Below, one piece after another: positions 25,763 through 48,900 of a stretch of DNA of 64,000 nt. A program made the translations under genes and the position numbers. Each line of letters opens with the position of its first letter. Position 1 is the stretch's first letter. Location of the stretch: the IMG/VR virus record IMGVR_UViG_3300036766_002181, positions 1 through 64,000 of that record; one strand, given 5' to 3'. The notes under the pieces were generated by a model. It did no database searches. It was not told the origin of the DNA and saw only the letters and a list, made by a program, of their open reading frames with translations.

Positions 25763-28213
25763 TCAAAAATCTATGCGTGTTTTAAACACAATCTTGTCTC
25801 CGCTGCGTTTCAAAACAGGCTGAGCAAGATTGCTTTTCATTATTACATTCATATTCTCATCGTGTATCAGAATTGATGAAATGTAGACAAATCTTTGATC
25901 CTGTTCGTTCTTTAAATCTGAATTTGCCTCAAGTGCCTCGTCAAAGGTTGGGTTTGAGGAAGAAACCAATTGTTGTGGTCTTGCATAAGCACTTATCGTA
26001 TATACGTGTATATTTTGAACCCCTCTAAAAGAAATATCAAAGCCTTCTTCACCAAAGAAGGATAGATTTGGGTGTTTAATCAAAACCAGGCCTTCATTAT
26101 AAAAGACATTGCCAACAGATGCCCAGGTTGCATGATCCTTATCAAGAGAATCTGCCCTATATAGATTTCCCATGCCATCATCCTTAAGGACCATCCCAAA
26201 CTTGTTGTCTGAACCTGACAAAATAGGATCTGTTAAAACAAGTGAGCCGGGCTTAATTTGTTTGCCATAAAAAAGATTGCTTATATCAAAAACAACAACC
26301 TGGTTAGAGGAGTTGTCTCTAAGTCTATGAAGAAGGGTTAAGGCCCCTGTAAATCCACGATTAAAATCTTCCGGGCTGGTTCCAAAAACATCATTTGTAA
26401 TATCGCTATTTTCAGATTGAATTGTTAGGGCAGAGGATACAAGGTTTCTTAAACTGACAAGCCCAAGAGAAGGATTGCCAAGATCATTTGAATATCTTCC
26501 ATTAAATGCCCCTGACATTTCTTCAAGAAACCCAAAATTTGGGATCCAGTTGCCGTGGTCACATGGAAGAACAGAATAAAGTCTTTTTTTGTTATTGCCG
26601 GCACATGAACTTGAGGTATATAGAAATTCATTTGCTGATGCCAACACAGAGTTTCCAGGAGAAAGCGTAGAACCTGTTAGGGCATATAGTCTAGGATAGT
26701 TCCCTGTAGCAAAGTCCCTAACATAATTCTCCAGGTTTGGATAAAGGCCGCCTACGCCAAAGGCCATATCTGCCGCATAGGGAGTCTCTGTGGAGCCATC
26801 TCTTTCTTCAAAGGGAGTAACAAACTCTCCACCATTTGAGCCAACGAAAGCCCTATAGGGAGACTCTGTTGTAAAGAAGGGAGGAATATATAACTTTAAG
26901 CCATCCAGGCTTGCGGGTGCCTTTTTGTTTAAAGAGGATATATCTTCAGAGGTTAAATATTTGTTATAGATTTTAAGATCATGAATCTCTGCATTAAGGG
27001 GATGATTAAAGGAAAAGCCAGTTGGTTCATCTGTATCGTCTGTCAGTTGCAATACTCCATCCCTGAGAGATGAATCTGGATTAAAGAATAGGTTTAACTC
27101 GTTATCTCCCTCAAAGAAGTTGCCAACACAAAGGGCAAAAGGCTCTAGAGTCTTTCCACTATCATAAAGTGCAAATCCAGGATCTGCCACAAAAAAGGTT
27201 CCTGCCCTCTGTCCATTTATGATAAAGGATCCAGAGCCATGGTTATAATCTGATCCGCCATAGCACAGGGCAACATGGTTCCATTCGTTTCGTTTTAAGG
27301 ATACACCAGCATCATCAGATGACAAAAAGACCCCGCTTAAAAGGTTCTCAGACAAGGGAAGCCTGCTTGGTCCCTTGCCAAGGGAGCCTGAACCAAGCTG
27401 AAGCATAATCCTAAATCTATCAGGCTTTCCATTTTCATCCTTTTGGGAACCGGAAACGACTGATATGGCATAGGCAGAAGAGAGATGAAGAACCGTGCCG
27501 GCCTTATATGGAACCTCTGAATATTTTGGATTTATCCAGAAATCAAAGGAAAAAGCCTCTCCTGACTTAAAGCCATAATTTGAATCATATTGCCCTGTTC
27601 CAACCTGTGAACCAGAAGGGTTGGGATAAACCAAGACAGAATCATTGGGTGTGGGAAAAGAGGTATCGGAGGTTGAGGCAGAAGAAAAGAAATGAAGAGA
27701 ATGATAGTTGGTATAGGCAAACTGTGCAGACAAGGGATAAGAGGTTCTATAGTAGGGTAAAAGATGGTCTACAACAAGATTCTTTCTTATCGTGTTTGAG
27801 GTAAAATTAAAGGTAGGAACAAATCGAATAATCTCTTGCTTTTTTTGCTTTCTTAGGCTTTCACTTGTATTTGTTACGGCAAGAAGGTAGGATTCAATTG
27901 GCGATTCTATATCTGTCAGGCTGGCGCTTAGATTAAGAATATTCTGTCTAAACTGTTCAAAGCCATGGTCTTCAAAAGCCGTTCTGTTTGTCGGCCCAAG
28001 AGGGTAGGTTTCTTTTTCAAATGGAGATCTTATGGCAAATACATTAACGGATCCTGTATTATCAAGAACCGCTTCAGGATTGCCAAAGGTTCCTGTGAAA
28101 TAAATCTTGGCACCAGAGCCGTCTCTTCTTGGTCTTGAAGAATAGGATCGAGAAGGATTTGTTTCTATTGAAAAAAATTCGGTGTTATCTGATGTTATTC
28201 TTTGAATGCTCAT
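25763..28213 (-). CDS. Virion structural protein with a LamG/concanavalin A-like domain
   Basis: FSFDFWINP, WNHVALCY, IINGQ, IHDLKIYNK; C-terminal YISSILIHDEN...SNLAQPVLK...FKTRIDF module. Confidence 0.75.
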   Translation of the reverse strand: MSIQRITSDNTEFFSIETNPSRSYSSRPRRDGSGAKIYFTGTFGNPEAVLDNTGSVNVFAIRSPFEKETYPLGPTNRTAFEDHGFEQFRQNILNLSASLTDIESPIESYLLAVTNTSESLRKQKKQEIIRFVPTFNFTSNTIRKNLVVDHLLPYYRTSYPLSAQFAYTNYHSLHFFSSASTSDTSFPTPNDSVLVYPNPSGSQVGTGQYDSNYGFKSGEAFSFDFWINPKYSEVPYKAGTVLHLSSAYAISVVSGSQKDENGKPDRFRIMLQLGSGSLGKGPSRLPLSENLLSGVFLSSDDAGVSLKRNEWNHVALCYGGSDYNHGSGSFIINGQRAGTFFVADPGFALYDSGKTLEPFALCVGNFFEGDNELNLFFNPDSSLRDGVLQLTDDTDEPTGFSFNHPLNAEIHDLKIYNKYLTSEDISSLNKKAPASLDGLKLYIPPFFTTESPYRAFVGSNGGEFVTPFEERDGSTETPYAADMAFGVGGLYPNLENYVRDFATGNYPRLYALTGSTLSPGNSVLASANEFLYTSSSCAGNNKKRLYSVLPCDHGNWIPNFGFLEEMSGAFNGRYSNDLGNPSLGLVSLRNLVSSALTIQSENSDITNDVFGTSPEDFNRGFTGALTLLHRLRDNSSNQVVVFDISNLFYGKQIKPGSLVLTDPILSGSDNKFGMVLKDDGMGNLYRADSLDKDHATWASVGNVFYNEGLVLIKHPNLSFFGEEGFDISFRGVQNIHVYTISAYARPQQLVSSSNPTFDEALEANSDLKNEQDQRFVYISSILIHDENMNVIMKSNLAQPVLKRSGDKIVFKTRIDF

Positions 28214-28234
28214 GATCTATGCCAGAATAACATT

Positions 28235-28241
28235 TAAATAT
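28235..28241 (-). promoter_or_regulatory. Putative late-promoter motif ATATTTA
   Basis: In the intergenic gap, 21 nt upstream of ATG 28213. Confidence 0.4.
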
Positions 28242-28304
28242 TTTCATTGCCAAATTTCTATAGACACCAAATTCAAATACAAACACATGAAATCATTTGG
28301 ATTT

Positions 28305-29468
28305 TTAAAAATCAAGACGAAGTTTTAGCGTGGTTTCACGATCATTTGCTTTCAAAATTGGTCGAGAAACCTTGGCCACGGCAAGCAGGTTATCATTGGC
28401 ATCATAAAGGCCAATTGAGGTAACAAAGGTAAAGGACTGCTGGGTTTCCTCTTGTCCCTCGTCAATAACAACAATTCTATTATCTGCATCTGTGTAGGTG
28501 GGATTACTTGAGTAGTTGAATTCGTCGGCTCCCAATCGAGCAAAGTAAATTGTTGAATTGATATTTGTAATATTTTGAAAGGTTATTGCCGTCTCGTCGC
28601 CTGAACCAGAGAATCTTGTTGAGGCCACATGGTCAACGATATCGTCAATGGAGGCAGAAACTAAAAGACTTCTAAAGGATCCTGTAAAATTTGGTTCAAA
28701 GCCATCGGCATTGACCGCATCGATAACCCCAGAAAGAGGCCCCTCAAAGTCAAGGCTTCTTGACATGTCAAGAACCAGGATTCCTCGATCAATAAATAAA
28801 AGACCAAGAGGGCTTGTAGTGTCGGCACTATTAACAACCGTCGAAACTTGCCCGCCAAAAGTATATAGCTTATTTGTGCTTGAGTTAATATCAGTTATAA
28901 TTTTGGTTGCAGGATCACCAAGAACGGCCAGGTTGCCACCTGTTGGACTGGCGCTGGCGCTTGGATTAAATCTAAGGGCAAAGGTTTCCCTCTTTATCTG
29001 ATCTCTTGCAAAGAGTCTCTTGAAACAAATAAATGCCGCTTCTTTAATTGGAAAGGTTGTTGAGTTATTGTTGGTGCTAAACACTTCATCGGCATCTCCC
29101 AGAAGATTTTGTGCCATCATGCGGTAGATATCCATCTTTTCGCGCATCATTAAGGTTTCTTGTGAAAAGAGATACTTTCCATTGGCATCAATTGTTGGAT
29201 TTTCTGCCGTGACAACCGAGCTTGAGGGAGACAGACCGACAGTCATATCAAAAACAGCATTTGCGGTTTGTAGTGTAAAGTCTTGATCAAAGACGGTTTG
29301 GAACAACGAGGATGTAACTCCGGGTCCAAGGCCGCCTGTTACAAAGACTTGATATTTTCTTCTGGAGGTTGATGAAGATATGTCTGTGTTAACAATATCA
29401 ATAAGCTGGTTTAGATAAGACTTACCTGTTTTAATGTCCTGTCCAGAAAATTCTTTAAATACGGACGT
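28305..29468 (-). CDS. Virion structural protein; probable start is ACG at 29468 (387 aa), 54 codons upstream of the ORF-track start
   Basis: Frame stays open upstream of 29306 (SVFKEFSGQDIKTGKSYLNQLIDIV...YQVFVTGGLGPGVTSSLFQ); AGGG lies 7 nt before the ACG; C-terminal TSIGLYDANDNLLAVAKVSRPILK...LRLDF. Confidence 0.75.
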   Translation of the reverse strand, partial: TSVFKEFSGQDIKTGKSYLNQLIDIVNTDISSSTSRRKYQVFVTGGLGPGVTSSLFQTVFDQDFTLQTANAVFDMTVGLSPSSSVVTAENPTIDANGKYLFSQETLMMREKMDIYRMMAQNLLGDADEVFSTNNNSTTFPIKEAAFICFKRLFARDQIKRETFALRFNPSASASPTGGNLAVLGDPATKIITDINSSTNKLYTFGGQVSTVVNSADTTSPLGLLFIDRGILVLDMSRSLDFEGPLSGVIDAVNADGFEPNFTGSFRSLLVSASIDDIVDHVASTRFSGSGDETAITFQNITNINSTIYFARLGADEFNYSSNPTYTDADNRIVVIDEGQEETQQSFTFVTSIGLYDANDNLLAVAKVSRPILKANDRETTLKLRLDF

Positions 29469-29491
29469 ATTGTTACCCTGTCTTTCTTTTT

Positions 29492-30205: not shown

Positions 30206-30236
30206 TTTGTCTTATTCTCTTTCTTGTCTTCCTTGC

Positions 30237-30243
30237 TAAATAT
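30237..30243 (-). promoter_or_regulatory. Putative late-promoter motif ATATTTA(GCAA)
   Basis: Intergenic; the 11-mer ATATTTAGCAA also occurs upstream of 43911. Confidence 0.45.
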
Positions 30244-30285
30244 TTGGTTCATTTAAATTATTGGCCATGACTCTTTTATTGTATA

Positions 30286-32202: not shown

Positions 32203-35200
32203 CTATTTTCTATTTTCTATTGTTATAAAAAACTGTTCAAACAAAATGTTTCTGTCGGTTCTTGGTTTAAAGAAAACTGCCCCATCTATCTTTCTTGTTT
32301 CCAATACGTCCCTATAGGTATAGGCATCAGTCGTAGATTGGTTTATCTCAAAACCATCAACATCAAGTGGTATATGAAAGACTCTATCGAAGATTTTTGG
32401 GCTTAGAATCTTATCCTTTAGATAGTTGGGCGCAAAAATAACATTGCCAGACTTAAAGTCAAAAATAAGGTCTTTGATGCTTTGCTTTGTGTTTGGACTA
32501 GCAAGAATCTCTTCTAGGGCTTGGTTTCCGGGAATATTTTCTTTTAATATTTTTCTTATGTAAGAAATCAAAAGCCTATCTAATCTGGGATCTGTTGCCC
32601 TTGTAATCCTTGTTTCTTCATTGACAATAAAGGTTTCTTCGTTTATTTTCATTCCTGTAGAAAGCCTAATATAGTTTTCTAACAAAAAACTAACAACGTG
32701 ATTTGAAAAGAGATGTTGTTTTTCTGAAGAGGCTAAGAAAGCATATTTCTCTTGCGACACCAGTTGGGATTTGGTATATTTTATTGGATTATTGGAATTT
32801 GCATAATCTACAAGAACATCTTGCTTTAAGATATCATTCCAGTCCTCTTCAGCATCTAGGTTTTTTACCATTTCAGATTCAAGCTGATATAGGCTTAAGT
32901 CAAAGATATATTTTCTTGGTTTAAAATTAATCCCCTCATAGGCAAGATTTTTTCTATATACATTTATGGTAATTACATCGGTTTCTTTTTGATTAAATGC
33001 ATTTGTTTGATTCTTTTCTGCCTCAGACAAGGAAACCCTGTCTAGTAGGTTTCTTGAAAATCCGGTAGGCAAACCGACTGAAAGAACCTTTACTCTTGTT
33101 TCTGCCTCATTTGCCGTCTGATACTTTGGCTCCATTAATAGGGTATAAAGAGCTTTTTTAACCTTTGCATGAACGGCATTTGTGATAAAGATATTCTCTT
33201 TTTTAATCTCTTTTGAGCTTATATCAAGTGCCGATCTGTTTAGGGTATTGGCAACCTTCCATCTAACATCCCTTAAGGCAACCTGGCTGTTTCTTATCTG
33301 AGATTCGTTTTTAAGAATTCTAAGATCATTTATGGTATGTTGATCTTCCAAAAAGGCCTGTAGAGTATTTGGATTATATGCATTTAAAGCCTTTGATTTT
33401 GCCTGCATTAGGCCCTCTTTAATTTTTGACAAAGAAAACAAGATGTTTTCTACTATGTGCCGTTCTTCAGATAGCTTTTTAGCAATCGAAACCAGATCTT
33501 CTACTATGGATTTTTGTGCAGCATTGTCCCCAATAGAGGCTATTGTTTTTTCTGGGGTTCTATTAATATGGCCTACAATTACCTCTCTTTCTTCCTTTTT
33601 TGATTTTTTGTTATTATCATCCTTGCCATTGTCAAGTTCGTCTACCCAGGATATAGAACCTATCATTTCATCAATGGCGCTATCCACCAACTCTGTATTT
33701 TTTATATTTGTTTTAATCGTTATGTTACCCTTTTCAGTATGAAATTCTGAAAAGGTAAAAGCCTTGGTTAGGCTTGTAAAAATTTCAAACATAATCAAAA
33801 GTTGTGTACTCGTGCTTAACAGATTAAATCTTGTTCTACCAGAATCATCATTAAGCAAATAATTTCTTTCGCCTGAAGATGAGGCAAGATTAGAAATCTT
33901 ATTAACAAAAAGAATATATTCCTCAATTAAATTGGTCTTGGTATCAGTTAGGGTTCCATTTACAATCTTTGTTAACACGGTTTTAATAAGAGAATCTGGA
34001 ATAAAGTGCTGAACCAACTCGCCCTGAACAACTTGTCTCAACGAGGATAGTGGTCCATTTTTAGCATCATCAATAATTTTTTTAGCATTTTTATCAGGCA
34101 AAAGAAGAATCTTTACTCTTAAATCTATTGCATCGATAACTTGTGAAATTACAGGCTTAACAATCCTTGCCGGATTCTTTCCAAAAATAGGAGAAAAGAC
34201 TTCAGACAAATCTCCACCAACCTGTCTAACAAAGGTTTTGATTGCTGGAAATTCTTCCAAGGATTTAAGTTCCTTTACAAGATCTGACCAAACGTTATTG
34301 TCGCCGTCTGAATTTAAGGTGATCCCCACCAATAAACAATATTGAAAAAGTAAACTTTTTAATTCTAAATCTTTATTTGCCAATTTTAATAGAGCAGCGG
34401 CCAAGACTTGTTCGGCTTCCATTTTTTTAATCTTAGTCTTGTTTATATTTTTAATTGAAACACTTTTATTATTATCCAAAACAGAAGATACTGTTGTCTT
34501 GAAAAGAGAACTCATTGTTCTAAAATAAAGCAAGTCAGAATCCAAAGAGTGCATTTTGGCATTCTTTCCCTTGGACAAGCTAAAAAATTCATAGGCAGAG
34601 TCTAATTTTGTAAAAGAATCAGAAAAAGAATTAACGTATTGCACAAGGGGGCCCGTATTAAAATCTTGTCTGTTTCCTTGTTGCTGTGTTCCTACTGTGG
34701 ACAAGTCAAATATCGTGTTAATATAATAGGATTTTCCAGGAATAAAGATTCTTCTACCGTTCTTGTCATTAACGGTATCGTCTATATGCTTGGATTCAAA
34801 GGGCAAAACTGTTAAATTAAAACTACGATTTTGGGCATCAGGTATATTTGGAATGCCGCCAACAATGGGCTGATGAATTAATCTCGCAAAAGAATTTTCT
34901 CCCTTAACCGGAATGAAAATAGAATTGCCAATAACTCCTATGAGATTGTCAAATGGAGTTCCAAAGGCGTCTTGTATGTCGAAGTTGTCTTGCAAGAAGC
35001 CAATAGTGTCCTTGGTCCCAAGCGCATTTGAGATTTTGTATTCTTTGCCTATAAGATTGAACAACAGCTTTAATCTGTTCTTCGCATTTCCTGGAAGGGA
35101 GTTTTGGAAGGAGTTGAAAAAGTCACGTTGTAGCGCATTTTTCGGAGCCTGAGTTGATCGAATTTTATCCACTTTAAATGTAAACCCATCTCTAAGGGTA

Positions 35201-39367: not shown

Positions 39368-40996
39368 TTAGTCTTCATTTGTCCTATCGTTAAACGGCTT
39401 GCCAGATTTGCCTTCAAAGTCATAAATACCAGAATCATTAACGTTTAATAGATAGTTGGAGGCCGTTACGTGGGCCTGTGTGCCAGAGACGAAGGTTATA
39501 CTCACTGGTGTATAAGATCCGGCAGGTTCATTTAAATTTGGCTTTTCTATGTAAAATTTAGAAATTGGTCGCTGCTCAAGCATGTCTCTGAATTGACCAA
39601 ATTTAGATCTTCTCCAACAACAGAAGGAATAAGATGGATCGGCGTGGTAAACGCCATATTTCCATCCACTTGTTCTCAAAAAGAAATTATTAAAATCTAT
39701 AACCGCATATTGACTAACCGTGGCAGTAATCTTGTCGTCAACAGAAGAAAATAGTTCTACTCCACCATCTGGTGCAAAGCCATTACATGTAGGATGGACG
39801 GGAAATTTTCCACCATTTAATAATTGATTTTCTGGGAAAAATCTACCAAAACCATTATGCTTTAATTTTCTTGTTACGTTTGCAAACTCGCTTCCAGTAA
39901 AACCGGCAGAGGAACTTGGCGTTGTTCCTTCGGTTATGGAATCTCCTGGCAAGCCTGTTGACCATGGCGCAACCCCTTCCCCGTCAATACTAAGCATATA
40001 GGGGGGCGAGGCTCCTAGCTCTTTATAAAATCCATAAAATCCTTTATAAATAAAAGAAATATCTGGATAAAGATTGTTGTATATTGGTTTAAAAATACCA
40101 TTAGATGCAGAGGTTGGTGTTTTTAATAATGTTATATGTCTTTTGCGATTTGGCCATGGTTCCTTTATTCCTTTTGTGGCAAAGCAATATTGCAAGGTAT
40201 ACATTGAAGACTTAAAAGGAGAAGGATGATTAATACAAGACAGATCTAATCCACCAGAGGTTACAAACGCTACGCCTTCTGAGCCAGTTAAACTTTGAGA
40301 TAGGGCAATTATATATTTTTTATCAAACGAGGGCTTAAACAGCGGCGAAAGATGCCTATATTTTGATTCAAAGGGGAACGAATATGCCCAAACATCATCG
40401 GAAACTGCCAGGCCATCATCGCTGCTTGTTAGCGAACATTCGTGGCTGCCAAGCGTTAGGTTAAACATTCTTGGTTGCCTTTCAACTGCGCCAGATACAG
40501 GCGTTACTTCAAAAAATGAACCAACAAAGCTAAGCTGTTGCCCGTTTGGATATAAAAATTCGCCTATGCCTTCAGAAAACCTGGCTCCATTAACTCTCGA
40601 AATATCGGGCGGGCGAGGCAAAACCGTATCTGCAAACCTTTCTGTTGGGGAGAAAAGTTTTAATAATAAATTTTTAGAGGGTGAGGGTATGTTTTCTGGC
40701 AGCAGTATATGACTTCCTATAACTTCTGCAAAAACATTTACATTATTTATCGCATCTCTATAATTTATATCCGTTAATCCAATATGCAACCCCCTTCCAA
40801 ACAAAGGAGCCAAGTAGGTTAATGAGCCAAGCTTAAAGCCATTTTTAAAACTAGAAGTGACAGCAGGACTTGCATTGGACATAAAAATATTTCGGGTACC
40901 ATCAAAAATGCTTCCTGGCGTGAAAATGCCATCTGTATAAGAGCCCGAGTAATTATCTAAAGCTTCTACTTCAAATTGATCTGAAACATAAACCAT
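39368..40996 (-). CDS. Hypothetical structural protein
   Basis: 542-aa ORF in the structural block; Ser/Gly-rich. Confidence 0.75.
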   Translation of the reverse strand: MVYVSDQFEVEALDNYSGSYTDGIFTPGSIFDGTRNIFMSNASPAVTSSFKNGFKLGSLTYLAPLFGRGLHIGLTDINYRDAINNVNVFAEVIGSHILLPENIPSPSKNLLLKLFSPTERFADTVLPRPPDISRVNGARFSEGIGEFLYPNGQQLSFVGSFFEVTPVSGAVERQPRMFNLTLGSHECSLTSSDDGLAVSDDVWAYSFPFESKYRHLSPLFKPSFDKKYIIALSQSLTGSEGVAFVTSGGLDLSCINHPSPFKSSMYTLQYCFATKGIKEPWPNRKRHITLLKTPTSASNGIFKPIYNNLYPDISFIYKGFYGFYKELGASPPYMLSIDGEGVAPWSTGLPGDSITEGTTPSSSAGFTGSEFANVTRKLKHNGFGRFFPENQLLNGGKFPVHPTCNGFAPDGGVELFSSVDDKITATVSQYAVIDFNNFFLRTSGWKYGVYHADPSYSFCCWRRSKFGQFRDMLEQRPISKFYIEKPNLNEPAGSYTPVSITFVSGTQAHVTASNYLLNVNDSGIYDFEGKSGKPFNDRTNED

Positions 40997-40999: not shown

Positions 41000-43009
41000 C
41001 TAGGTCTCGTCCTCTTCAGAAATGCTTCTGTTTGTAATAGAATCAGCGCCCTCAATTGCTTCGCCAACATTAATGCTCGTTAGCAATTGATTTAGAGTAT
41101 CGTGTTTTTCTTTCCCCTCTACTAAAATAGAGCCATAAAGTGTAAGTCTGGCAGGGGCAGCAGGAAAACTAAGCTCTGGTCCTTTTCCGGCATACACATT
41201 TTCAGAACCACTATTAACAAAGATCATAGAATCCAAACCCAAGTCTAATGGCACCTGCCACCCAAGAATCAAATTGTCTGTTGGTAATAGCAAATAGGGA
41301 TTATCTTTTGAATGACTTATTGGCAATACAAAAGTATCTCCAGGAACAAGGGCATTGTCTATACTTGAACTGATCCCAGGATTTCCATATGGATTAACAT
41401 AGTTTCTGCCATTTGAAATATCAAAGCCATTTCTTCCAAATGCATTTATTTTTGTTTTAACAAAAGTACGAACACCGGAAGTTAGGACGCCGGCTGGATC
41501 TGTATTTCCTCCAGCGGCCACATGAAACATGCTATAGTTGTCAACTCCATAAAGAGACTTTGCCGTAGCGGCCATAGTAAAATTGCCACGCCATATAGAC
41601 TCATTTGGCATCAGGGCTTCATCGACAACGACAAACCCCTCTCTACCAACCATTGTTTCTTTAAGATATTCGAAGACAAGCTCTGGCTGATAATCAAATA
41701 TACTAGTGTATGCCGGCCTTATTTCTGTAAATAAATTTATTGCAGCAATTTGCATATAGGTTAAAAGATCTCGACTATCTGACTTTCTCAAAGAACTACT
41801 TGGGATACTAAAACCAACATTATAATCAAAAAGAGTTGGCCCGTCAGTTTGAGAAGAGTGGTCTTCTATTGCCGAAACTGTCTGTTTAATTTCTCTGTTA
41901 AATGGGCCTCTTTGATTAAGAATAAAAAAAGTTGCTATATTTGTAAGAGTGCCATATTCGGGAGGTCTATTGCTGATAGATTGATTTAGGTTACATCCAC
42001 AGCTAACTTCAAGAACTGCCTTCTCAAAAAGAAAGGGTCTATCAATTAGGTCGCACATTGAAATCATATTTGAAGAAGAGGCATGAAACTTTTCGTGATA
42101 AGGAAAACCAAAAGTCGTTGTTGGTCTGGCAAATTGAGTTATGTTGTATCTTGTTGAATCAAATTCCAAAAGCTCAAAGCTGGCTCCTGCATCCATAGAT
42201 TTGCCAAAACCAATTGGCAGGTTATCCAGCATTGCCCTTAAAACCTTTTCTCTTTTTGGGGTGCCACCTGAGCCAAAAATTGTTTGATAATAATCGCCAA
42301 AGTTTATCCCGGACCCAACTCCTTCAAATCTCTTGGTTTCTTTGTTCCAATATGCCATTGGATAGTTTTGGTTGTCTGTTGGTGTGCCTTCATCTCCATA
42401 AACATAAAAAGAATGGGCCTCTGCTGGCGTTAGGTCGATTTCTATTTTTGTTTTTGCCCAAACTGGTTCATCTAAAAACTCGCCAAATTCTTCTGGCCTG
42501 CTTCCTGTTGCAAAAAATCTTGTAAGCTTATTTTTTTGTACGGCCTCAAGATGAGGAAACATTGTAAAAATATTTGTTAGGTCCAATGTGGGCTCTTCTA
42601 CGATCTCTCTGCTCTTTCCCATTGCGGCAGGCTGATGATGATCCCTGAAGGCCCCCAGAGGCTGTCTTGGCGAGACAATGGACACGAACTCGTCTACAAC
42701 TCCCTTGACAGACCTGGCTCCCAGGGAAGAGGAAAGACCAGTTATTATGTCGGCTCCCAACTCCTGATAGGCAAGAGATGAAGTAAGTGAATTTGGCACA
42801 TTTGCCCCCAAAATCACTTGTTCATTTCCATCCTCTGCAAAAAATGGAATTGAATTTAAATCATCAAAAAAAACAGGATATTTGCCTGTTCTTCCATCTG
42901 AGGCAATTCTGCTTATTGTTGGAAGAGATCCCCCCTTATCGCCCTTTATTCCCAACAATACCCTTGGTGGCAGTCCACGGATCCTGGTTTTCTTATTTTG
43001 TCTTGGCAT
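41000..43009 (-). CDS. Hypothetical structural protein
   Basis: 669-aa ORF in the structural block. Confidence 0.75.
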   Translation of the reverse strand: MPRQNKKTRIRGLPPRVLLGIKGDKGGSLPTISRIASDGRTGKYPVFFDDLNSIPFFAEDGNEQVILGANVPNSLTSSLAYQELGADIITGLSSSLGARSVKGVVDEFVSIVSPRQPLGAFRDHHQPAAMGKSREIVEEPTLDLTNIFTMFPHLEAVQKNKLTRFFATGSRPEEFGEFLDEPVWAKTKIEIDLTPAEAHSFYVYGDEGTPTDNQNYPMAYWNKETKRFEGVGSGINFGDYYQTIFGSGGTPKREKVLRAMLDNLPIGFGKSMDAGASFELLEFDSTRYNITQFARPTTTFGFPYHEKFHASSSNMISMCDLIDRPFLFEKAVLEVSCGCNLNQSISNRPPEYGTLTNIATFFILNQRGPFNREIKQTVSAIEDHSSQTDGPTLFDYNVGFSIPSSSLRKSDSRDLLTYMQIAAINLFTEIRPAYTSIFDYQPELVFEYLKETMVGREGFVVVDEALMPNESIWRGNFTMAATAKSLYGVDNYSMFHVAAGGNTDPAGVLTSGVRTFVKTKINAFGRNGFDISNGRNYVNPYGNPGISSSIDNALVPGDTFVLPISHSKDNPYLLLPTDNLILGWQVPLDLGLDSMIFVNSGSENVYAGKGPELSFPAAPARLTLYGSILVEGKEKHDTLNQLLTSINVGEAIEGADSITNRSISEEDET

Positions 43010-43017
43010 GTTTTTGT

Positions 43018-43911: not shown

Positions 43912-43916
43912 GTTGC

Positions 43917-43923
43917 TAAATAT
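43917..43923 (-). promoter_or_regulatory. Putative late-promoter motif ATATTTA(GCAA)
   Basis: TATATTTAGCAACATG directly before the start of 43018..43911. Confidence 0.5.
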
Positions 43924-43957
43924 AATTGAACAACAATATGGGAATTTGTCTTATTTG

Positions 43958-46900
43958 TTAATATCGATTGAAATGGCCTTCAATCAATTGGAGAAGCAGG
44001 CTGTCTCGCAATCCGCTTCTTATATCTTCTCCAAGATATATGTCTTCAAACTTATAATCATATTTTGCCCTTTCGCAGATTGAGCTTTCTATAATATAGT
44101 TGCAGCCCAAAAATCTGGTCTTTCTTGGAATAAGTTGTGCAACAAAGGTTCCCATGTTTGTGTCGAACCACTTGTAAAACTCAAAGAAGCCCTTTAAATT
44201 AATTTTATCTTTAAGTTTGTTAAAATAAAGGTCACGAATTATATCAAGTTCTTTATATCCACAGGCAAACTGAAGTTCTGGATTTCCCAGAACATTGTTT
44301 AGTTCGTCAAGACTAGAAAATATTGTAATAATGTCCTGATCAAGACTATCAACAATAGAAAAGTCTATCGATAGCTTTGGACTGTCGGTTGCCTCTTCAT
44401 TTGGATTTATCTCATAAACTGGAGATGTTTCAATCCAGGGAGAAAGAGCTTGGGTAATCGTATCAAGGGATTGAAGGCCTCTAATGCGAACCTTGTTTTC
44501 TGTTGTTCCTTCATCAATTTTCGGAGACAAATAAGAGAAATAAAAATGCTCTGGCAAAATAGTCTCTTGACTTATTGGAAATCCTGTGCCAGATAGATGA
44601 AATTCATTTTGTGAGAAATCAGTAATTTCTATGCTGCCTGAAGAGTCTGAACTTAACACTATCTGGTCGGTTGAGGCATCTATACGAAGCCTTTCATAAG
44701 ATCCTGATACATCTACTGAGGCAAAGTTAAAATTCTTCTTGGGATCCCTTACGCCAACCGATCTATAGTTTAAGACATGCTCTAACCAGTCTTCTTCTGT
44801 AAGATACTTGGACCAAAATCTTATTTGTCCAATTCTGCCCTTAAAACTTCTCGTTTGCTCATCAGAGCCAGAGAGATGATCAGAAGGTGCCAGGGTAAGG
44901 CTAGAAGAACCCACGACCAACATGGGGCCAACTATTGAGCCTGTGGCATTTTGCCACCTAGAAGTAGATGGAAAATCTGCAAAATAAGAAGAGGTGGTAT
45001 ATGCCTCAAGTATTTCTCCATTATTCTGCTTTGCAGCCCGTAGAAAGTAGGACGAAGAAACATCTGAGTTTAGGCCAGGATAATCATTTCTTTGACGACC
45101 AAAAGAAATGTGCCATTGTTTTCCATCAAAAATATCTACCCCTGTTATTGGGAGCATGAAGGTTCTTGCTGCTGAAGAATCAGGGGCCGTATAAAGCTTT
45201 ATAGAAGAATCCTCAGAAGATGCAACAAGATTTGCCAGAATGTTTATTCCCGAGCTGCTGCTTAATTCTAGTCTGGCAAGACTTTGAGATGCAGGATATT
45301 CCATACTTGGAATAAAGCGATAAATTCCCTCTACAGAAAAAGAACCAGAGGTTAAAAGCGCATTGCTTGCCTGCGATGGACCAGCCAGAGGAACACCCGG
45401 CTCTACTCTGGAAGAAGATAGATATGGAGAGGTTATAAGCCCGCCCGAAACAAAATCCAACATGGTAGATACTTCAAATCTGTGCTCTCTATTAAAGCTT
45501 AGTGGTCTTTTTGTCGGGCCGCCATATTCTCTTATTCTGAAGTTTGAATCGGGATCTATGCCGGCAGAACGAATAAATGATTTGATCGAATGGATTGTTC
45601 CTTTTGACTTAAGAACATCTTGTAAATTAATCAAAATTCTGCGCCAGATTTGATTTTGAATATTTTGTAGACCAAGGATATTTGTCGAAAACCCTGTATC
45701 TAAATTTTCACCTTCAATGAATTGCTCAATGGTTGTTCCAACAAACAAAGATGGCAATTGAATTCCTTCCCTTCTTGCAAAGGCACTTAAAAAATCATTG
45801 GGTACTGTATCTGTTTCATCATATCCAATTTTGTTTAAGAACCCAAAATTTTGTATATAAAGCTTCATTTCATCAAAGAATTTTGCCCAGGTATAAAGCA
45901 GGGAAAGAAGAACCTGGGTAGAGCCCATCGTCGTATTTCTTGGCTCACTACCTGACATTGTTGTTACAATTTCTCCTTCTTCGGTAGATAGGCTATCCTG
46001 ATATTGACCTTCTTCAAGGTAGTGTCTAGGAATTAGCTTAGAAATCAAATTGGGATTGGCTTCGTCATAAATTGAGGCGCTTAATAAAAGATTTTCTCGC
46101 AAAGCCGCATTTCCTTCTACCCCTAAGAACAAAACAGGAGAAAACTCCAGGCGCTCAAGAAACATGGGAGTATCTCCTGAAGCAGAAAGAATCTCTCTAA
46201 CCCCAAGAGTCAATGCCCTGGTATTCAATCTTCCATGCAAAGAATTTTTTGAATAATCTAAAACAAGATTCGTATTACTACCAGAAGGCTCATTAAATCT
46301 GTAGTAAAGCTTTAAATTATCATCTGCAAAAATTGATTTTGTTTTAAATTCTTCTATTTGCTTTTTTGTTCTTAGACTGTGCCATATACGCAACTCGTCA
46401 ATTGAGCCAGAAAATGTACTATTCGGAGTATAAAGGGCTCCTAGCGAGCTTCCGCTGCCAATCAACATATCGCTTTGACCAGTTCCAAGCGAGCCAAACT
46501 CTATGGGCATCGAACTTGAAGTTTCTAACTTGCCATTTAAATAGCCATAAACAGTATGGGTTCCGGGAGATCTATCCCATGCCCAATGAATGTGATTCCA
46601 GGCTTCCCTTTCCAGATTTAACGTTACCTTGTCTTCATAGGCACCAGAGACGGCCAAAAAAGAAACTCCTGCCAGACTTGATCCTGTTAGTGATTCCAAG
46701 ACAACCGCAAATCCATTGTTTGATCCTGATTGTTTTGTTATAATTGATTGAGAAAGATTGCCGAGAGATTGACTTGGCACATATAGCTGCATCTCTATAG
46801 TCATTGAAGATAGCCCCGGATCTAGAACGGTTTCTCCTGTTTTTAATCTTGAGAGTTCTAAAAACTGACTGCCAGCAGAATCCTTAACAACAACCATGGT

Positions 46901-47344
46901 TCCGTCATCAGAGCCGACACCAGGAGCTGAACCTGAAAAAAATAAATATCCTTTGTTTTTTAAGAATTGATCATAAACGTATTTTTCAAAGCCCGTTAAT
47001 CCACCAAAGAATAACTCGTGTTCATTTTTTGTTCCATCAAATGGAAAATTATTGACTATCTTGTCAAAGGCAACATTGGTTTTTACTTGAGCACTATTAA
47101 AAAAGGTATGATTTGAAAACTCGCCGTAATTGACATTTAGCTGTTGAGTAGACTGTAGTCCTGTTCCTTGAATATTATATTTAAAGGAGCCTGTAGATCC
47201 TATCGATAGACCTTCCTCTTGGCTTGAATCTGAAAAATTAAGTCCTGGACTTTCTTCTATCTCCTGCTGTCCTCTAACGACGGTTGGTATAAAAAGCGGA
47301 GGTCTAAGCGTTCTAAGCCTTTCTATATTGCTACCAAAAGCCAT
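43958..47344 (-). CDS. Large baseplate-associated protein with two LamG domains
   Basis: WNHIHWAW...YLNGK...FSGSIDELRIW and WHISF...FKGRIGQIRFW; lies next to the gp6/gp25-like genes. Confidence 0.8.
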   Translation of the reverse strand: MAFGSNIERLRTLRPPLFIPTVVRGQQEIEESPGLNFSDSSQEEGLSIGSTGSFKYNIQGTGLQSTQQLNVNYGEFSNHTFFNSAQVKTNVAFDKIVNNFPFDGTKNEHELFFGGLTGFEKYVYDQFLKNKGYLFFSGSAPGVGSDDGTMVVVKDSAGSQFLELSRLKTGETVLDPGLSSMTIEMQLYVPSQSLGNLSQSIITKQSGSNNGFAVVLESLTGSSLAGVSFLAVSGAYEDKVTLNLEREAWNHIHWAWDRSPGTHTVYGYLNGKLETSSSMPIEFGSLGTGQSDMLIGSGSSLGALYTPNSTFSGSIDELRIWHSLRTKKQIEEFKTKSIFADDNLKLYYRFNEPSGSNTNLVLDYSKNSLHGRLNTRALTLGVREILSASGDTPMFLERLEFSPVLFLGVEGNAALRENLLLSASIYDEANPNLISKLIPRHYLEEGQYQDSLSTEEGEIVTTMSGSEPRNTTMGSTQVLLSLLYTWAKFFDEMKLYIQNFGFLNKIGYDETDTVPNDFLSAFARREGIQLPSLFVGTTIEQFIEGENLDTGFSTNILGLQNIQNQIWRRILINLQDVLKSKGTIHSIKSFIRSAGIDPDSNFRIREYGGPTKRPLSFNREHRFEVSTMLDFVSGGLITSPYLSSSRVEPGVPLAGPSQASNALLTSGSFSVEGIYRFIPSMEYPASQSLARLELSSSSGINILANLVASSEDSSIKLYTAPDSSAARTFMLPITGVDIFDGKQWHISFGRQRNDYPGLNSDVSSSYFLRAAKQNNGEILEAYTTSSYFADFPSTSRWQNATGSIVGPMLVVGSSSLTLAPSDHLSGSDEQTRSFKGRIGQIRFWSKYLTEEDWLEHVLNYRSVGVRDPKKNFNFASVDVSGSYERLRIDASTDQIVLSSDSSGSIEITDFSQNEFHLSGTGFPISQETILPEHFYFSYLSPKIDEGTTENKVRIRGLQSLDTITQALSPWIETSPVYEINPNEEATDSPKLSIDFSIVDSLDQDIITIFSSLDELNNVLGNPELQFACGYKELDIIRDLYFNKLKDKINLKGFFEFYKWFDTNMGTFVAQLIPRKTRFLGCNYIIESSICERAKYDYKFEDIYLGEDIRSGLRDSLLLQLIEGHFNRY

Positions 47345-47349
47345 TGATA

Positions 47350-48900
47350 CTATTTGGTTACCTTAAAAATAAAGCCCTTATTGTTAACGACAAAATCTTT
47401 TCCTTGATCATTTTTGATAATAAACTCTAGCTCATAAACTTCATTAATGTCTAGATCGCACGGAAATAGATCAAAATACATGCCATCGGAGTCTGTTGAT
47501 AGCCTTGTGTTTATAGAGAATGGAATAACTTCTTCATGCTTGGAATATGCCTTAATCAATCTCCATCTCATGTCTGGAACAATTAGTGGCCTTGTTGGTA
47601 CAGGATATCTTGTTGCAACCTGGCTTAAATCTCTGTCTTGCGCAAAAACTCTAATTCTTGCCTGCTCTTCCTTCTTATAGGATTGTTTAAGGTTGGTCGC
47701 ATTTACAACGTAGTTTTTTTCAAACGAGTTATTGTAGCCACCAAGAAGTTTTTTAAACTTAAAATAGTTTGTCGCAAGCGTCACCAGCCCAGAGGCATTC
47801 TTCCAGGTTCCTTTTAACTCGACTTCATTTCTGTTGGCGATGAAATTGTTAAGTTCAGAATCCGTTGTGGGGTCTAATATAAAATTTGAATAGTAAATAC
47901 CCATATCTAGTAATGAGCCAGAAAAGGATTGAGAGTAATAAACAACGCTTCTTGTAAGATGGTTTATACTTGCACTAAAGTTTGGCTGAAAACTGGAGGT
48001 CATAAATTCGATGCTTTTACTAGCGGCAAATTCAAGCTCAACACAATTTGCTCCTGTTATATCTGCGCCGCCAGAAACAAAGTTAATAAGATTTCCTTGA
48101 ACCTGGTTATAAACGAAAAAACTTTGACTTAAAGAAAATCTTGGATCACCAGAAGTGTCTGCAAGTCTGTCATCATCAAACTCGACAACAAGTCTTGGTC
48201 TTAGTGTGGAATTCATTGCCTGCCGTGAGCCAAATCTTTTAACAAATCTTGTTATTCCGTCTTGCTCTTGAGAATCTATAAAAGAAATTCTAAATCCATT
48301 GTTATCAACGATTCCAACAATCGAAGCAGAGACAAGCTTGGTTACATTGAAAAAGGCATCTTCATCGCCACGTTCAAATTGTTGAACAATGCCGAGACTT
48401 TCTGACCCAAATCCAAGATCACCAGAAACAAATATATCAATATTAGAATCTCCTATGTTTCCTTGGGCAGATGCTCCAGAAAGGCTCCAGGCAACGCCAT
48501 AGCTGGCAGATTCAAAATTTGCCGTATCTAAGTCTCTATAGGCTACAACATCAAATCCCCTGCCTTCGTCAAATGCTTTTGCTAGTGGATAGGCCACTAA
48601 GTCATAGTTTGAAGGAACGGTTTGCCCACCGTATACATCCTTCAATCTCAAAGAAGCCGTAAAGCTTGGATGAGAAACTCTCTCTATTGTTAAAAAATCT
48701 TCAGGATAATCGAATTTAAGCAAAAGTCTTGACAACTCTACGACAGGACCAGAAGAACCTGACAATGTAGACTCGTTATAAAGTTTATAGGCATCTAAGG
48801 TTCCAGCCTGGCCCGTATTGCTTGTAGAGGCTCGTTTGCCTGCAATAATTTTGTCTTGCAAATATGCGTCTTTAGAGGCACTTAAAAGTCTGTAGGTCAT
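47350..48900 (-). CDS. Structural protein, DNRLRE-like N-terminal domain
   Basis: ASKDAYLQD...SNTG...SRLLLKFD...ASLRL...RPRLVVEF pattern. Confidence 0.6.
   Translation of the reverse strand: MTYRLLSASKDAYLQDKIIAGKRASTSNTGQAGTLDAYKLYNESTLSGSSGPVVELSRLLLKFDYPEDFLTIERVSHPSFTASLRLKDVYGGQTVPSNYDLVAYPLAKAFDEGRGFDVVAYRDLDTANFESASYGVAWSLSGASAQGNIGDSNIDIFVSGDLGFGSESLGIVQQFERGDEDAFFNVTKLVSASIVGIVDNNGFRISFIDSQEQDGITRFVKRFGSRQAMNSTLRPRLVVEFDDDRLADTSGDPRFSLSQSFFVYNQVQGNLINFVSGGADITGANCVELEFAASKSIEFMTSSFQPNFSASINHLTRSVVYYSQSFSGSLLDMGIYYSNFILDPTTDSELNNFIANRNEVELKGTWKNASGLVTLATNYFKFKKLLGGYNNSFEKNYVVNATNLKQSYKKEEQARIRVFAQDRDLSQVATRYPVPTRPLIVPDMRWRLIKAYSKHEEVIPFSINTRLSTDSDGMYFDLFPCDLDINEVYELEFIIKNDQGKDFVVNNKGFIFKVTK

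What the first reader, a model, noticed from the sequence alone, without database searches (positions are those of the whole stretch)
25763..48900. Strong [ST]-[GA]-S tripeptide enrichment in a subset of baseplate/tail proteins: candidate glycosylation sequon
Seen (manual counts of SGS/TGS/SAS/TAS): about 15 in 43958..47344 (1128 aa), 9 in 25763..28213 (816 aa), 7 in 47350..48900 (516 aa), 5 in 28305..29306, 5 in 39368..40996 and 4 in 8232..9845, versus about 1 each in the 1347-aa terminase and the 1243-aa protein at 32203, and none noticed in SbcD-SbcC. Sites often follow a hydrophobic residue (FSGS, LTGS, VSAS, LSGS). Inference: acceptor sites for the phage glycosyltransferases encoded at 56-64 kb. 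Alternative: ordinary beta-turns in beta-rich folds.
Basis: partly seen in the sequence, partly recalled or inferred. Interest (0 to 1): 0.75.

Follow-up and report, generated by a model that had tools for sequence, protein, structure and literature searches.

The report
Ser-Gly-Ser motif on phage virion proteins
A short serine motif, [Ser/Thr]-[Gly/Ala]-Ser, is four to six times over-represented in the exposed tail, baseplate, sheath and capsid proteins of this jumbo phage and hundreds of relatives that share a pair of phage-specific sugar-transferase genes, so it may mark where the virus coats itself with sugars, but no chemical evidence exists yet.

Summary
All six counts are exact (15, 9, 7, 5, 5, 4). 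The six proteins carry 45 sites against 11.9±3.3 after shuffling within 10-residue blocks, and 7-14 for other orders of the same residues. The window is the start of a 245-kb jumbo myovirus. Genome-wide, the excess sits in about 15 virion proteins, including the insertion domains of both sheaths and of the major capsid protein.

The same protein families are enriched in about 80 metagenomic relatives and in three cultured phages (Flavobacterium immuto, Microcystis Mel-JY01, Rhodothermus RM378). All carry a homologous GT4 pair. T4, P-HM2 and LR756511 lack the pair and the enrichment, so "ordinary beta-turns" fails as a generic explanation.

The glycosylation reading stays unproven. One 92%-complete relative (G005) is the most enriched of all yet has only a remote GT. 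LR756508 has one GT of the pair and no enrichment. In fibres the motif is a periodic hexad, which suggests a structural repeat.

Verdict: a genuine, lineage-specific, selected motif. An acceptor sequon is the best single explanation (about 0.4) and a purely structural motif is close behind (about 0.35). It can be tested directly in the cultured phages.

The parts
43958..47344 (-). 1128-aa baseplate or tail protein with two ConA-like/LamG beta-sandwich domains. It carries 15 [ST][GA]S sites.
   Evidence: Pfam Laminin_G_3. The AF2 model and Foldseek hits are to pentraxin, LamG and neurexin folds. There are 15 sites against 3.1 expected. 119 homologues average 13.1 against 2.8.
47350..48900 (-). 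516-aa protein made of a chain of beta-sandwich (Ig/CBM-like) domains, directly downstream of the gp6/J-like wedge gene. It carries 7 sites.
   Evidence: 7 sites against 1.1 expected. 79 homologues average 8.15 against 1.5. The AF2 model has pLDDT 89.3. Foldseek hits are to macroglobulin/CBM folds. Sites lie in strands, strand starts, a helix and a loop.
25763..28213 (-). 816-aa LamG-containing virion protein with 9 sites.
   Evidence: Weak Pfam Laminin_G_3 match. 9 sites against 2.2 expected. The G002 orthologue has 10 against 1.75.
28305..29306 (-). 333-aa protein with 5 sites.
   Evidence: 5 sites against 0.8 expected. The G002 orthologue has 6 against 1.2.
39368..40996 (-). 542-aa protein with 5 sites.
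   Evidence: 5 sites against 1.4 expected. The best G002 match, a 1422-aa protein at 43% identity over part of its length, has 11 against 3.2.
8232..9845 (-). 537-aa protein with 4 sites. This is the weakest of the six.
   Evidence: 4 sites against 1.15 expected, p about 0.02.
41000..43009 (-). 669-aa protein. It has only 2 sites here, but its family is enriched in relatives.
   Evidence: 2 sites against 1.3 expected here. 32 homologues average 6.9 against 2.3.
48903..50795 (-). gp6/Baseplate_J-like wedge protein. This is a non-enriched virion control.
   Evidence: Pfam Baseplate_J. 1 site against 0.97 expected. 79 homologues average 0.41 against 0.94.
50792..51271 (-). gp25-like wedge protein with no sites.
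   Evidence: Pfam GPW_gp25. 0 sites.
56428..57633 (-). GT401: a GT4-family glycosyltransferase with an intact EX7E motif, the second gene of the conserved pair.
   Evidence: Pfam Glycos_transf_1. EX7E is invariant in 32 of 33 family members. It is syntenic in relatives. Homologues occur in immuto, Mel-JY01 and RM378 p014.
57630..59036 (-). GT468: a phage-specific GT4-family glycosyltransferase, the first gene of the pair.
   Evidence: Pfam match. Its ESM Atlas clusters are 90-100% viral. Homologues occur in immuto, Mel-JY01, RM378 and LR756508.
59092..63813 (.). The variable glycan-tailoring part of the cluster: a third GT4 (59092..60246, -), a sulfotransferase (60315..61019, +), two GT2 (60992..61915 and 62106..62957, -) and an NAD epimerase/dehydratase (62905..63813, -).
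   Evidence: Pfam and NCBIfam matches. The cluster continues beyond the window with GT2 genes at genome 67710..68462 and 69749..70747.
14231..18274 (-). Large terminase interrupted by intein sequence. This is a non-enriched control.
   Evidence: Pfam Terminase_6N, Hint, Intein_splicing and LAGLIDADG. 1 site against 1.0 expected.
20062..23298 (-). Fused SbcD-SbcC nuclease. This is a non-enriched control.
   Evidence: Pfam Metallophos, AAA_23 and SMC_N. 0 sites against 0.9 expected.

Best explanation
[ST]-[GA]-S, usually flanked by a hydrophobic residue on each side, is a selected, lineage-specific surface motif of virion proteins. It most likely serves as the acceptor site for O-glycosylation of serine in the host cytoplasm by the phage's own GT4 enzymes (GT468 and GT401). 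The variable downstream enzymes (further GT4 and GT2, a sulfotransferase, an epimerase/dehydratase) would then extend and decorate the sugar. The result would be a glycan coat, possibly sulfated, on the outward-facing parts of sheath, capsid, baseplate and fibres.

Shown: the motif's specificity, its restriction to virion proteins and to the non-core domains of sheath and capsid, its maintenance across deep divergence and across GC 31-56%, its absence from phages lacking the GT family, and the conservation of the GT pair.

Inferred: that the GTs act on protein, that the motif is what they recognise, which serine is modified, and that the sites are solvent-exposed.
For: Specificity:
- SGS is 5.4x, TGS 5.0x, SAS 3.2x and TAS 3.0x over expectation.
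- SGT, TGT, SAT, GGS and AGS are near 1.
- Order-permuted controls give 7-14 against 45.

Restriction:
- 15 virion proteins hold 98 sites against 23 expected.
- The other 275 ORFs hold 51 against 71.
- All 18 sites in the two sheaths and the MCP lie outside the conserved core matched by Pfam/PHROG.
- gp6-like, gp25-like, terminase and nuclease are not enriched here. Tube, hub, tape measure and portal are not enriched in immuto.

Selection:
- The same orthologue families are enriched in 78-79 relatives at 40-50% identity.
- They are also enriched in G002, whose GC is 55.6% against 38% here (Spearman 0.62, p=8e-5).
- 80 of 80 sheath relatives carry 3-12 sites.
- In the 1128-aa family only 4 columns are fixed, while 14 polymorphic hot-spot columns supply 6.4 sites per sequence.

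Structure alone does not require the motif:
- Homologous LR756508 sheaths have NGN, PGS, SSA, NSS and VLS at the hot spots.
- In the confident 516-aa model the sites occupy strands, strand starts, a helix and a loop.

GT link:
- The pair is syntenic upstream of the baseplate module in relatives.
- It is present in immuto, Mel-JY01, RM378, G006 and G007. The first three are enriched genome-wide or in a tail block. For G006 and G007 only the sheath was counted (6 and 9 sites).
- T4, P-HM2 and LR756511 have neither the pair nor the enrichment.
- No Bac_transf or Wzy_C/ligase gene was found in the contig, which fits direct cytoplasmic transfer.
Against: There is no chemical evidence of any modification.

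G005 (92% complete) has the strongest enrichment (376 against 118 expected). It has no GT401-family gene, no GT2, and only a remote GT468-like ORF.

LR756508 has a clear GT468 homologue but no enrichment.

All phages that carry the pair are related, so the co-occurrence may reflect shared ancestry rather than function.

In fibres the motif recurs with spacings of 6 and 14 residues, as in SVTGSLQVSGSLTVTGSV. That is what a structural beta-helix-like repeat looks like.

Most excess sites sit at fixed structural positions, namely hairpin turns and strand ends.

Outside this clade the GT pair is not next to structural genes. It sits next to a PD-(D/E)XK nuclease and IMPDH/GMP reductase, so a role on DNA or on host polysaccharide is not excluded.

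The own contig is rated only 57% complete, so gene absences are weak evidence.
Confidence: 0.4

Rival explanations
1. The motif is purely structural and is never modified. In this reading h-[ST]-[GA]-S-h is a lineage-specific building block of beta structure. It forms the corner of a hexad beta-helix-like repeat in fibres, and a tight turn or strand start in beta-sandwich domains. The small G/A faces inward and the two hydroxyls face the solvent. It spread through duplication and common descent of virion modules. The GT cluster does something else, such as modifying host surface polysaccharide or DNA.
For: Spacings of 6 and 14 residues are periodic in the fibres of G005, immuto and Mel-JY01. 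Hydrophobic residues flank the motif. In the 1128-aa model most sites sit at hairpin turns or strand ends. Most of the excess comes from about 18 recurrent alignment columns. G005 keeps the motif with almost no GT genes. LR756508 keeps a GT without the motif.
Against: Beta-rich virion proteins of T4 and P-HM2, including Ig-like and fibre proteins, show no enrichment. Homologous sheath domains in LR756508 use other turn sequences, so the fold does not demand the motif. The sites occur in several kinds of secondary structure. The motif appears in unrelated folds (LamG sandwiches, sheath and capsid insertions, fibres) but not in buried or core parts. It is maintained from GC 31% to 56%.
Confidence: 0.35
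2. The motif is functional but is not a glycosylation site. It could be the target of another modification, such as phosphorylation, acylation or ADP-ribosylation. It could also be an unmodified hydroxyl-rich surface feature selected for a physical property, such as hydration, low stickiness to particles, or weak polysaccharide binding.
For: The evidence for selection is the same as above. It does not require the GT pair, so G005 is no longer discordant. Several carriers are lectin-like or CBM-like folds.
Against: No candidate enzyme for another modification was identified, although no systematic search was made. The association with the GT468 family across lineages would then be coincidental.
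Confidence: 0.12
3. The enrichment is a statistical or compositional artefact of Ser/Gly-rich, low-complexity proteins.
For: The enriched proteins are Ser-rich, at 8-12%.
Against: The enrichment survives whole-protein and 10-residue-block shuffles and same-composition permutations. Very Ser/Gly-rich P-HM2 fibres reach only 1.4x. Codon usage at the sites is diverse. The signal replicates in hundreds of homologues.
Confidence: 0.02

Closest known systems
Mycobacteriophage virion O-glycosylation (Freeman et al. 2023, Cell Host Microbe). Known to me through its citation in PMC12619734 and from my own knowledge; the paper itself is not held in the library.
   Same: Phage-encoded cytoplasmic glycosyltransferases are proposed to decorate structural proteins of the phage's own virion. 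In this clade the GT genes lie close to the structural module.
   Different: In mycobacteriophages the glycans sit on C-terminal extensions of the capsid and tail-tube subunits. Here the candidate sites are scattered [ST][GA]S tripeptides in insertion domains of sheath and capsid and in baseplate and fibre proteins. The tube is not enriched in immuto. The hosts are Bacteroidota, a cyanobacterium and Rhodothermus rather than actinobacteria. There is a sulfotransferase and a large tailoring cluster. Nothing has been shown chemically here.
Aah/TibC (BAHT) heptosylation of AIDA-I, TibA and Ag43 autotransporters (own knowledge: Charbonneau et al. 2012, Mol Microbiol).
   Same: It is a cytoplasmic O-glycosylation of many Ser/Thr in a repetitive beta-helix. 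The enzyme recognises a short strand - acceptor loop - short strand element rather than a strict sequon. That resembles h-[ST]-G-S-h at turns and at hexad repeats.
   Different: Those enzymes are heptosyltransferases related to LPS heptosyltransferases, whereas the enzymes here are GT4. The substrates are secreted adhesins, not virions. No homology to them was tested or found here.
GtfA/GtfB O-GlcNAcylation of serine-rich repeat adhesins in streptococci and staphylococci (own knowledge).
   Same: Two adjacent GT4-type genes act in the cytoplasm on Ser in S-[A/V/E]-S type repeats, and further GTs extend the sugar.
   Different: No detectable sequence similarity to solved GtfA/GtfB chains. The acceptors there are long disordered repeats, whereas here they are folded beta domains. 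GT401 keeps EX7E, and GT468 keeps it in about half of its family, so there is no clear active/inactive division.
General O-glycosylation of Bacteroidota, motif D-(S/T)-(A/I/L/V/M/T) (own knowledge: Fletcher et al. 2009, Coyne et al. 2013).
   Same: The probable host phylum matches for this phage's nearest cultured relative, a Flavobacterium phage. It also involves a three-residue serine/threonine motif.
   Different: That system is periplasmic, lipid-carrier based and host-encoded, while virions assemble in the cytoplasm. The motif is different. No Wzy_C/ligase-type or Bac_transf gene is present in the contig.
"Moraphages", aquatic jumbo phages of Bacteroidota (PMC12619734).
   Same: They are large aquatic phages with predicted Bacteroidota hosts and have four glycosyltransferase orthogroups in the core genome, whose role was left open.
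   Different: Membership of this phage in that lineage was not tested. That paper reports no protein motif.

Membership tests
Phage virion O-glycosylation system (mycobacteriophage type) | Phage-encoded glycosyltransferase genes next to the virion structural genes | tested here: met
   The GT pair lies about 5 kb upstream of the gp25/gp6 baseplate genes here and is syntenic in relatives. It is not adjacent to them in immuto, Mel-JY01 or RM378.
Phage virion O-glycosylation system (mycobacteriophage type) | Glycans on C-terminal Ser/Thr-rich extensions of the capsid and tail-tube subunits | tested here: not met
   Candidate sites in the MCP are at 163-342, in the insertion and not at the C terminus. 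The immuto tube has 0 sites.
Phage virion O-glycosylation system (mycobacteriophage type) | Covalent glycan on virion proteins shown by mass spectrometry or staining | not testable with these tools
   This needs purified virions. immuto, Mel-JY01 and RM378 are cultured.
Protein glycosylation sequon (general) | Over-representation that is order-specific and survives composition correction | tested here: met
   45 sites against 11.9±3.3 in local shuffles. Permuted orders give 7-14. T[GA]S outnumbers S[GA]T 38 to 7.
Protein glycosylation sequon (general) | Sites are solvent-exposed on the assembled particle | tested here: inconclusive
   All sheath and MCP sites are in non-core insertion domains. 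In the 1128-aa model 13 of 15 sites are coil by DSSP, many of them beside strands. Three sites in the 516-aa model lie inside strands.
Protein glycosylation sequon (general) | Co-occurrence of the motif with the transferase across genomes | tested here: inconclusive
   Concordant: this clade, immuto, Mel-JY01 and RM378 (pair present, enriched); G006 and G007 (pair present, sheath counted only); T4, P-HM2 and LR756511 (neither). Discordant: G005 (enriched, remote GT only, 92% complete) and LR756508 (GT468 only, not enriched). The comparison is not phylogenetically independent.
GT4 (Glycos_transf_1, retaining GT-B) glycosyltransferases | Pfam Glycos_transf_1 match and an EX7E motif in the C-terminal domain | tested here: met
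   GT401 scores 32.7 bits (over the cut-off) and has EX7E in 32 of 33 family members. GT468 scores 26.0 bits (just under the cut-off of 26.4); its first E is invariant and its second is E in 6 and I in 5 of 11 members.
GtfA/GtfB serine-rich-repeat glycosylation | Sequence homology of the GT pair to GtfA/GtfB | tested here: not met
   phmmer against all PDB chains returns only weak generic GT4 hits (E>=0.1) and no GtfA/GtfB.
Bacteroidota general O-glycosylation | The D-(S/T)-(A/I/L/V/M/T) motif and a periplasmic, lipid-linked pathway | tested here: not met
   The motif is different. No Bac_transf or Wzy_C family gene is present in the 245-kb contig, although the contig is rated 57% complete.
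Concanavalin A-like lectin/LamG fold (1128-aa protein) | A LamG/pentraxin-type beta sandwich | tested here: met
   Pfam Laminin_G_3 at 2.2e-13. Foldseek hits to pentraxins, neurexin LNS and laminin LG domains at E 1e-6 to 1e-8.

The most novel reading that the evidence does not exclude
A large, mostly uncultured clade of aquatic myoviruses uses a three-residue serine sequon, [ST]-[GA]-S. The clade includes jumbo phages of Bacteroidota, the Flavobacterium phage immuto, the Microcystis phage Mel-JY01 and Rhodothermus phage RM378. The sequon would be read in the cytoplasm by a phage-specific GT4 enzyme pair. The phages would use it to cover the exposed surfaces of sheath, capsid, baseplate and fibres with phage-built glycans that vary from lineage to lineage and are sulfated in this phage. 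This would be a virion glycan coat encoded entirely by the phage, with a sequon that can be predicted from sequence.
Probability: 0.35. Interest if true: 0.85.

Novelty: new variant of a known kind. Interest (0 to 1): 0.62.

Why it matters
Protein glycosylation of phage particles has so far been shown only for some actinobacteriophages, and without a predictive sequon. If [ST]-[GA]-S is a sequon, three things follow.

- Glycosylated virion surfaces could be read directly from sequence in hundreds of environmental phage genomes.
- The long-unexplained core glycosyltransferase clusters of aquatic jumbo phages would get a function.
- A compact, cytoplasmic, Ser-directed glycosylation system with a short tag would be of interest for glyco-engineering.

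It would also bear on how phages mask or tune their surfaces in water, for example in adsorption, aggregation and grazing. Even if the motif is only structural, it is a clean, lineage-specific signature that flags virion proteins in genomes where homology searches fail. PHROGs found nothing for 10 of 10 window proteins.

Tried and rejected
- **DNA-level cause.** Rejected, because codons at the sites are diverse.
- **Compositional artefact.** Rejected.
- **Generic beta-turn usage.** Rejected as a general cause by T4 and P-HM2.
- **LamG-domain consensus as the sole source.** Rejected. Only a few sites match LamG motifs, and the sheath, MCP and 516-aa proteins have no LamG.
- **An active/inactive GT pair like GtfA/GtfB.** Suggested by the I replacing the second E of EX7E in GT468. 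Dropped because half of the family keeps the E.
- **T4-type late promoter TATAAATA upstream of the GT genes.** This motif is not used in this genome. A different upstream motif, ATATTTA[TA], precedes many genes but did not resolve when the GTs are expressed.
- **tblastn of the 1128-aa, the 704-aa and the immuto fibre proteins against GenBank phages.** This gave nothing useful.
- **PDB sequence search and ESM Atlas for the GTs.** These showed only generic or virus-specific GT4.
- **Search for a ThyA-type hydroxymethylase, to test the DNA-glycosylation rival.** None was found in the contig, but the contig is incomplete.
- **The search for related loci with an 8-sequence sheath alignment.** Failed for lack of conserved stretches. 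A 3-sequence alignment worked.
- **The Freeman et al. paper.** It could not be read because it is not held.

Full report
**What the window is.** The 64-kb window is the first quarter of a single 244,715-bp viral contig. CheckV rates the contig 57% complete. It is a myovirus.
- It has a gp23-type major capsid protein and two tail-sheath paralogues outside the window.
- Inside the window are a gp25-like and a gp6/Baseplate_J-like wedge pair, a large terminase interrupted by intein sequence, and a fused SbcD-SbcC nuclease.
- The nearest capsid proteins in GenBank belong to Flavobacterium phage immuto, the huge uncultured phages LR756508 and LR756511, Microcystis phage Mel-JY01 and Rhodothermus phage RM378.

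**Checking the observation.** The terminase and the 1243-aa protein have 1 each and the nuclease has 0.
- Shuffling within 10-, 20- or 40-residue blocks preserves local composition. It gives 10.7-11.9 sites for the six proteins together (sd about 3.2, maximum 24 of 2000) against 45 observed.
- Other orders of the same residues give 7-14.
- The motif is sharply defined. SGS, TGS, SAS and TAS are 3-5.4x enriched, while SGT, TGT, SAT, GGS, AGS and SGG are near or below 1. T[GA]S outnumbers S[GA]T 38 to 7.
- Codons are diverse, so this is a protein-level signal.
- A hydrophobic residue precedes the motif in 49% of sites and follows it in 44%, against a 32% background.

**Extent in the genome.**
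- Across 290 ORFs there are 149 sites against 94 expected.
- About 15 proteins hold 98 sites against 23 expected. The other 275 hold 51 against 71.
- Outside the window the enriched set includes a 704-aa protein (13 sites), both sheath paralogues (9 and 5), the capsid protein (4) and a neck-like protein (4).
- All 18 sites in the sheaths and the capsid protein lie in the regions not matched by the conserved sheath or gp23 cores, that is, in the insertion domains. By homology with T4 gp18 and gp23 these insertions face outward. This last point is an inference from established structures.

**Conservation.**
- 119 homologues of the 1128-aa protein (about 50% identity) average 13.1 sites against 2.8 expected, with a range of 4-20.
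- In 80 IMG/VR loci, enrichment is a property of the orthologue family. It is high for the 1128-aa family (4.4x), the 516-aa family (5.4x), the 669-aa family (3.0x) and the 315-aa family (3.6x). It is low for the gp6-like (0.43x), the 825-aa (0.5x), the gp25-like and the GT families.
- A 309-kb relative with GC 55.6%, against 38% here, has the same families enriched (Spearman 0.62, p=8e-5).
- In the 1128-aa family only four columns keep the motif in at least 80% of sequences. Fourteen columns carry it in 20-80% and supply 6.4 sites per sequence. Rare columns supply about the chance number. The excess therefore comes from recurrent hot spots that toggle between the motif and near-motifs such as SGT, SGA and TSS.

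**Structure.**
- AF2 of the 1128-aa protein has mean pLDDT 66.7. The regions 90-385 and 620-940 are mostly confident. The model shows two ConA-like/LamG/pentraxin sandwiches. Thirteen of its 15 sites are coil by DSSP, many of them at hairpin turns or strand ends; one starts a strand and one lies in a helix.
- AF2 of the 516-aa protein (pLDDT 89.3) shows a chain of beta-sandwich domains. Its seven sites lie inside strands (3), at strand starts (2), in a helix (1) and in a loop (1).
- So there is no single structural context. Accessibility could not be computed because the tools give no coordinates.

**Controls from other phages.**
- T4 virion proteins, including sheath, gp23, Hoc, baseplate and fibres, show no enrichment (about 13 observed against 25 expected).
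- In cyanophage P-HM2, 21 proteins of the structural region give 52 against 43, even in very Ser/Gly-rich fibres.

**The glycosyltransferases.**
- The cluster is real: three GT4, a sulfotransferase on the opposite strand, two GT2 and an epimerase/dehydratase in the window. Two more GT2 lie just beyond it.
- Two adjacent GT4 genes form a conserved pair: GT468 at 57630..59036 and GT401 at 56428..57633.
- The pair is syntenic upstream of the baseplate module in nearly every relative with enough flank and in four of four long contigs.
- The pair recurs in immuto (gp181/gp180), Mel-JY01 and RM378 (p013/p014).
- GT468 belongs to clusters that are 90-100% viral.
- In each lineage the pair is followed by a different set of sugar-tailoring genes.

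**Co-occurrence test.** Pair-bearing phages are enriched:
- immuto: 162 against 74 over the first 147 kb; gp101 53 against 12; gp056 13 against 1.75; sheath 8 against 2.6. Tube, hub, tape measure and portal are not enriched.
- Mel-JY01: a 508-aa structural protein 14 against 3.2; sheath 7 against 2.0; MCP 4 against 1.4.
- RM378: six tail-block proteins 27 against 4.2. Its sheath and MCP are not enriched.
- G006 and G007 carry the pair. Only their sheaths were counted; they have 6 and 9 sites.

LR756511 has no homologue of either GT and is not enriched (20 against 18.5).

Two genomes are discordant:
- LR756508 has a clear GT468 homologue but no GT401. It is not enriched (56 against 42 over 150 kb; its sheaths have 0 and 1 site).
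- G005 is a 176-kb contig rated 92% complete. It has the strongest enrichment seen (376 against 118; a 2188-aa fibre has 95 against 21). It has no GT401-family gene, no GT2, and only a remote GT468-like ORF (hhalign 91%, E 9e-7).

All pair-bearing phages are related, so the association is not phylogenetically independent.

**Evidence that the fold does not demand the motif.**
- 80 of 80 IMG/VR sheath relatives carry 3-12 sites (mean 7.0 against 2.1).
- At the six recurrent hot-spot columns, the equally related LR756508 sheath has SSA, NGN, VLS, NSS and PGS.
- At one column shared with this phage, pair-bearing phages read VITASFD, IVTASLD and AFSASID. LR756508 and RM378 read SHNLSFD, TYVLSLN and THSLTIN.
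- The structure therefore tolerates other small or polar turns. The convergence on [ST][GA]S in most lineages suggests selection for the motif itself.

**Evidence for a structural reading.**
- In fibre proteins the motif is periodic. Examples are SGSFSGSFTGDGSGLTGITASFFTGS and TSASYASTASY in immuto gp101, FLTGSLSTSGSLGVTGSIYY in gp056, FTGSIYISGSII in Mel-JY01, and SVTGSLQVSGSLTVTGSV in G005, where spacings of 6 and 14 dominate.
- This looks like a hexad beta-helix-type repeat with the G at a corner and the two hydroxyls outside.
- With G005, it makes a purely structural explanation a serious rival.
- The two readings are not exclusive. In AIDA-type autotransporters a repetitive strand-loop-strand element is both structural and the acceptor for cytoplasmic O-glycosylation (own knowledge).

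**Other points bearing on the GT role.**
- No Bac_transf, Wzy_C/ligase or ThyA-type hydroxymethylase gene is present in the contig. This fits direct protein glycosylation better than lipid-linked polysaccharide synthesis or glycosylation of hydroxymethylated DNA. The contig is incomplete, so this is weak evidence.
- In Mel-JY01, immuto and this phage the cluster lies next to a PD-(D/E)XK nuclease, and next to an IMPDH/GMP reductase in two of the three. That keeps a nucleic-acid role open.
- Expression timing could not be inferred.

**Literature.**
- No paper in the library describes such a motif.
- A 2025 study of aquatic jumbo "moraphages" of Bacteroidota notes four GT orthogroups in the core genome and leaves their role open, citing mycobacteriophage virion glycosylation as one possibility (PMC12619734).

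**Verdict.** The glycosylation-sequon reading is the best single explanation at about 0.4. An unmodified structural motif is close behind at about 0.35. Another function or modification is at about 0.12. The question can be settled by glycoproteomics on three phages that are already in culture.

Noticed in passing
window 14231-18274 (-): The 1347-aa large terminase carries intein sequence. Pfam finds Hint/Intein_splicing matches around residues 260-680, a second Hint match at 889-985, and a LAGLIDADG homing-endonuclease domain at 1124-1169. This suggests two inteins.
   Followed up: partly
window 20062-23298 (-): SbcD (Metallophos, residues 9-198) and SbcC (AAA_23/SMC, 413-1069) are fused in one 1078-aa ORF. 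The usual arrangement is two genes.
   Followed up: no
window 53470-54780 (-): A CCA-adding/poly(A) polymerase-type nucleotidyltransferase lies between the GT pair and the baseplate genes. RM378 also encodes a 'probable poly A polymerase'.
   Followed up: no
window 7385-8203 (-): An R2K-clade ATP-grasp protein. G005 starts with a RimK-like ATP-grasp gene. These enzymes add amino acids to proteins or small molecules and could be another source of protein modification.
   Followed up: no
whole genome, e.g. window 9846-9880, 18275-18290, 28214-28240: The motif ATATTTA[TA] is 11-fold enriched in upstream regions. It sits 5-35 nt before the start codons of many genes, including the terminase, the 816-aa protein, the 704-aa protein and the sulfotransferase. 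It is a candidate promoter element. T4-type TATAAATA is not used.
   Followed up: partly
window 60315-61019 (+): A PAPS-type sulfotransferase is the only plus-strand gene inside the minus-strand GT cluster. It is not part of the conserved pair and may be a lineage-specific addition that sulfates the glycan.
   Followed up: no
genome 71951-74001 (L001:7951-10001); Mel-JY01 81375-83368; immuto 48008-48949: A PD-(D/E)XK nuclease lies beside the GT cluster in this phage, Mel-JY01 and immuto. In this phage and Mel-JY01 an IMPDH/GMP reductase lies there too. This synteny spans very distant lineages and hints at a link to nucleotide or DNA metabolism.
   Followed up: no
genome 104385-130272 (L003, L004): Several GIY-YIG/HNH homing-endonuclease genes are interspersed among the sheath, neck and capsid genes (PHROG hits for 104385-105620, 115560-116645 and 128218-130272). 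None carries the motif.
   Followed up: no
G002 (L115-L130): A 309-kb relative with syntenic, 40-47% identical virion proteins has GC 55.6%, against 38% here and 31% in G005. This is an unusually wide GC range inside one phage clade.
   Followed up: no
L111 1108-2886 (LR756508 304970-306748): Similarity to the GT468 family in LR756508 begins upstream of an in-frame TGA that separates a 152-aa ORF from the 438-aa GT ORF. This could be a recoded stop, a later start, or damage to the gene.
   Followed up: no
L213 2822-4249 (G005): Next to the remote GT-like ORF, G005 encodes a 475-aa protein with a signal-like N terminus, long Ala/Ser and Ser/Lys/Glu low-complexity runs, and a beta-rich C-terminal part. 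Its function is unknown.
   Followed up: no
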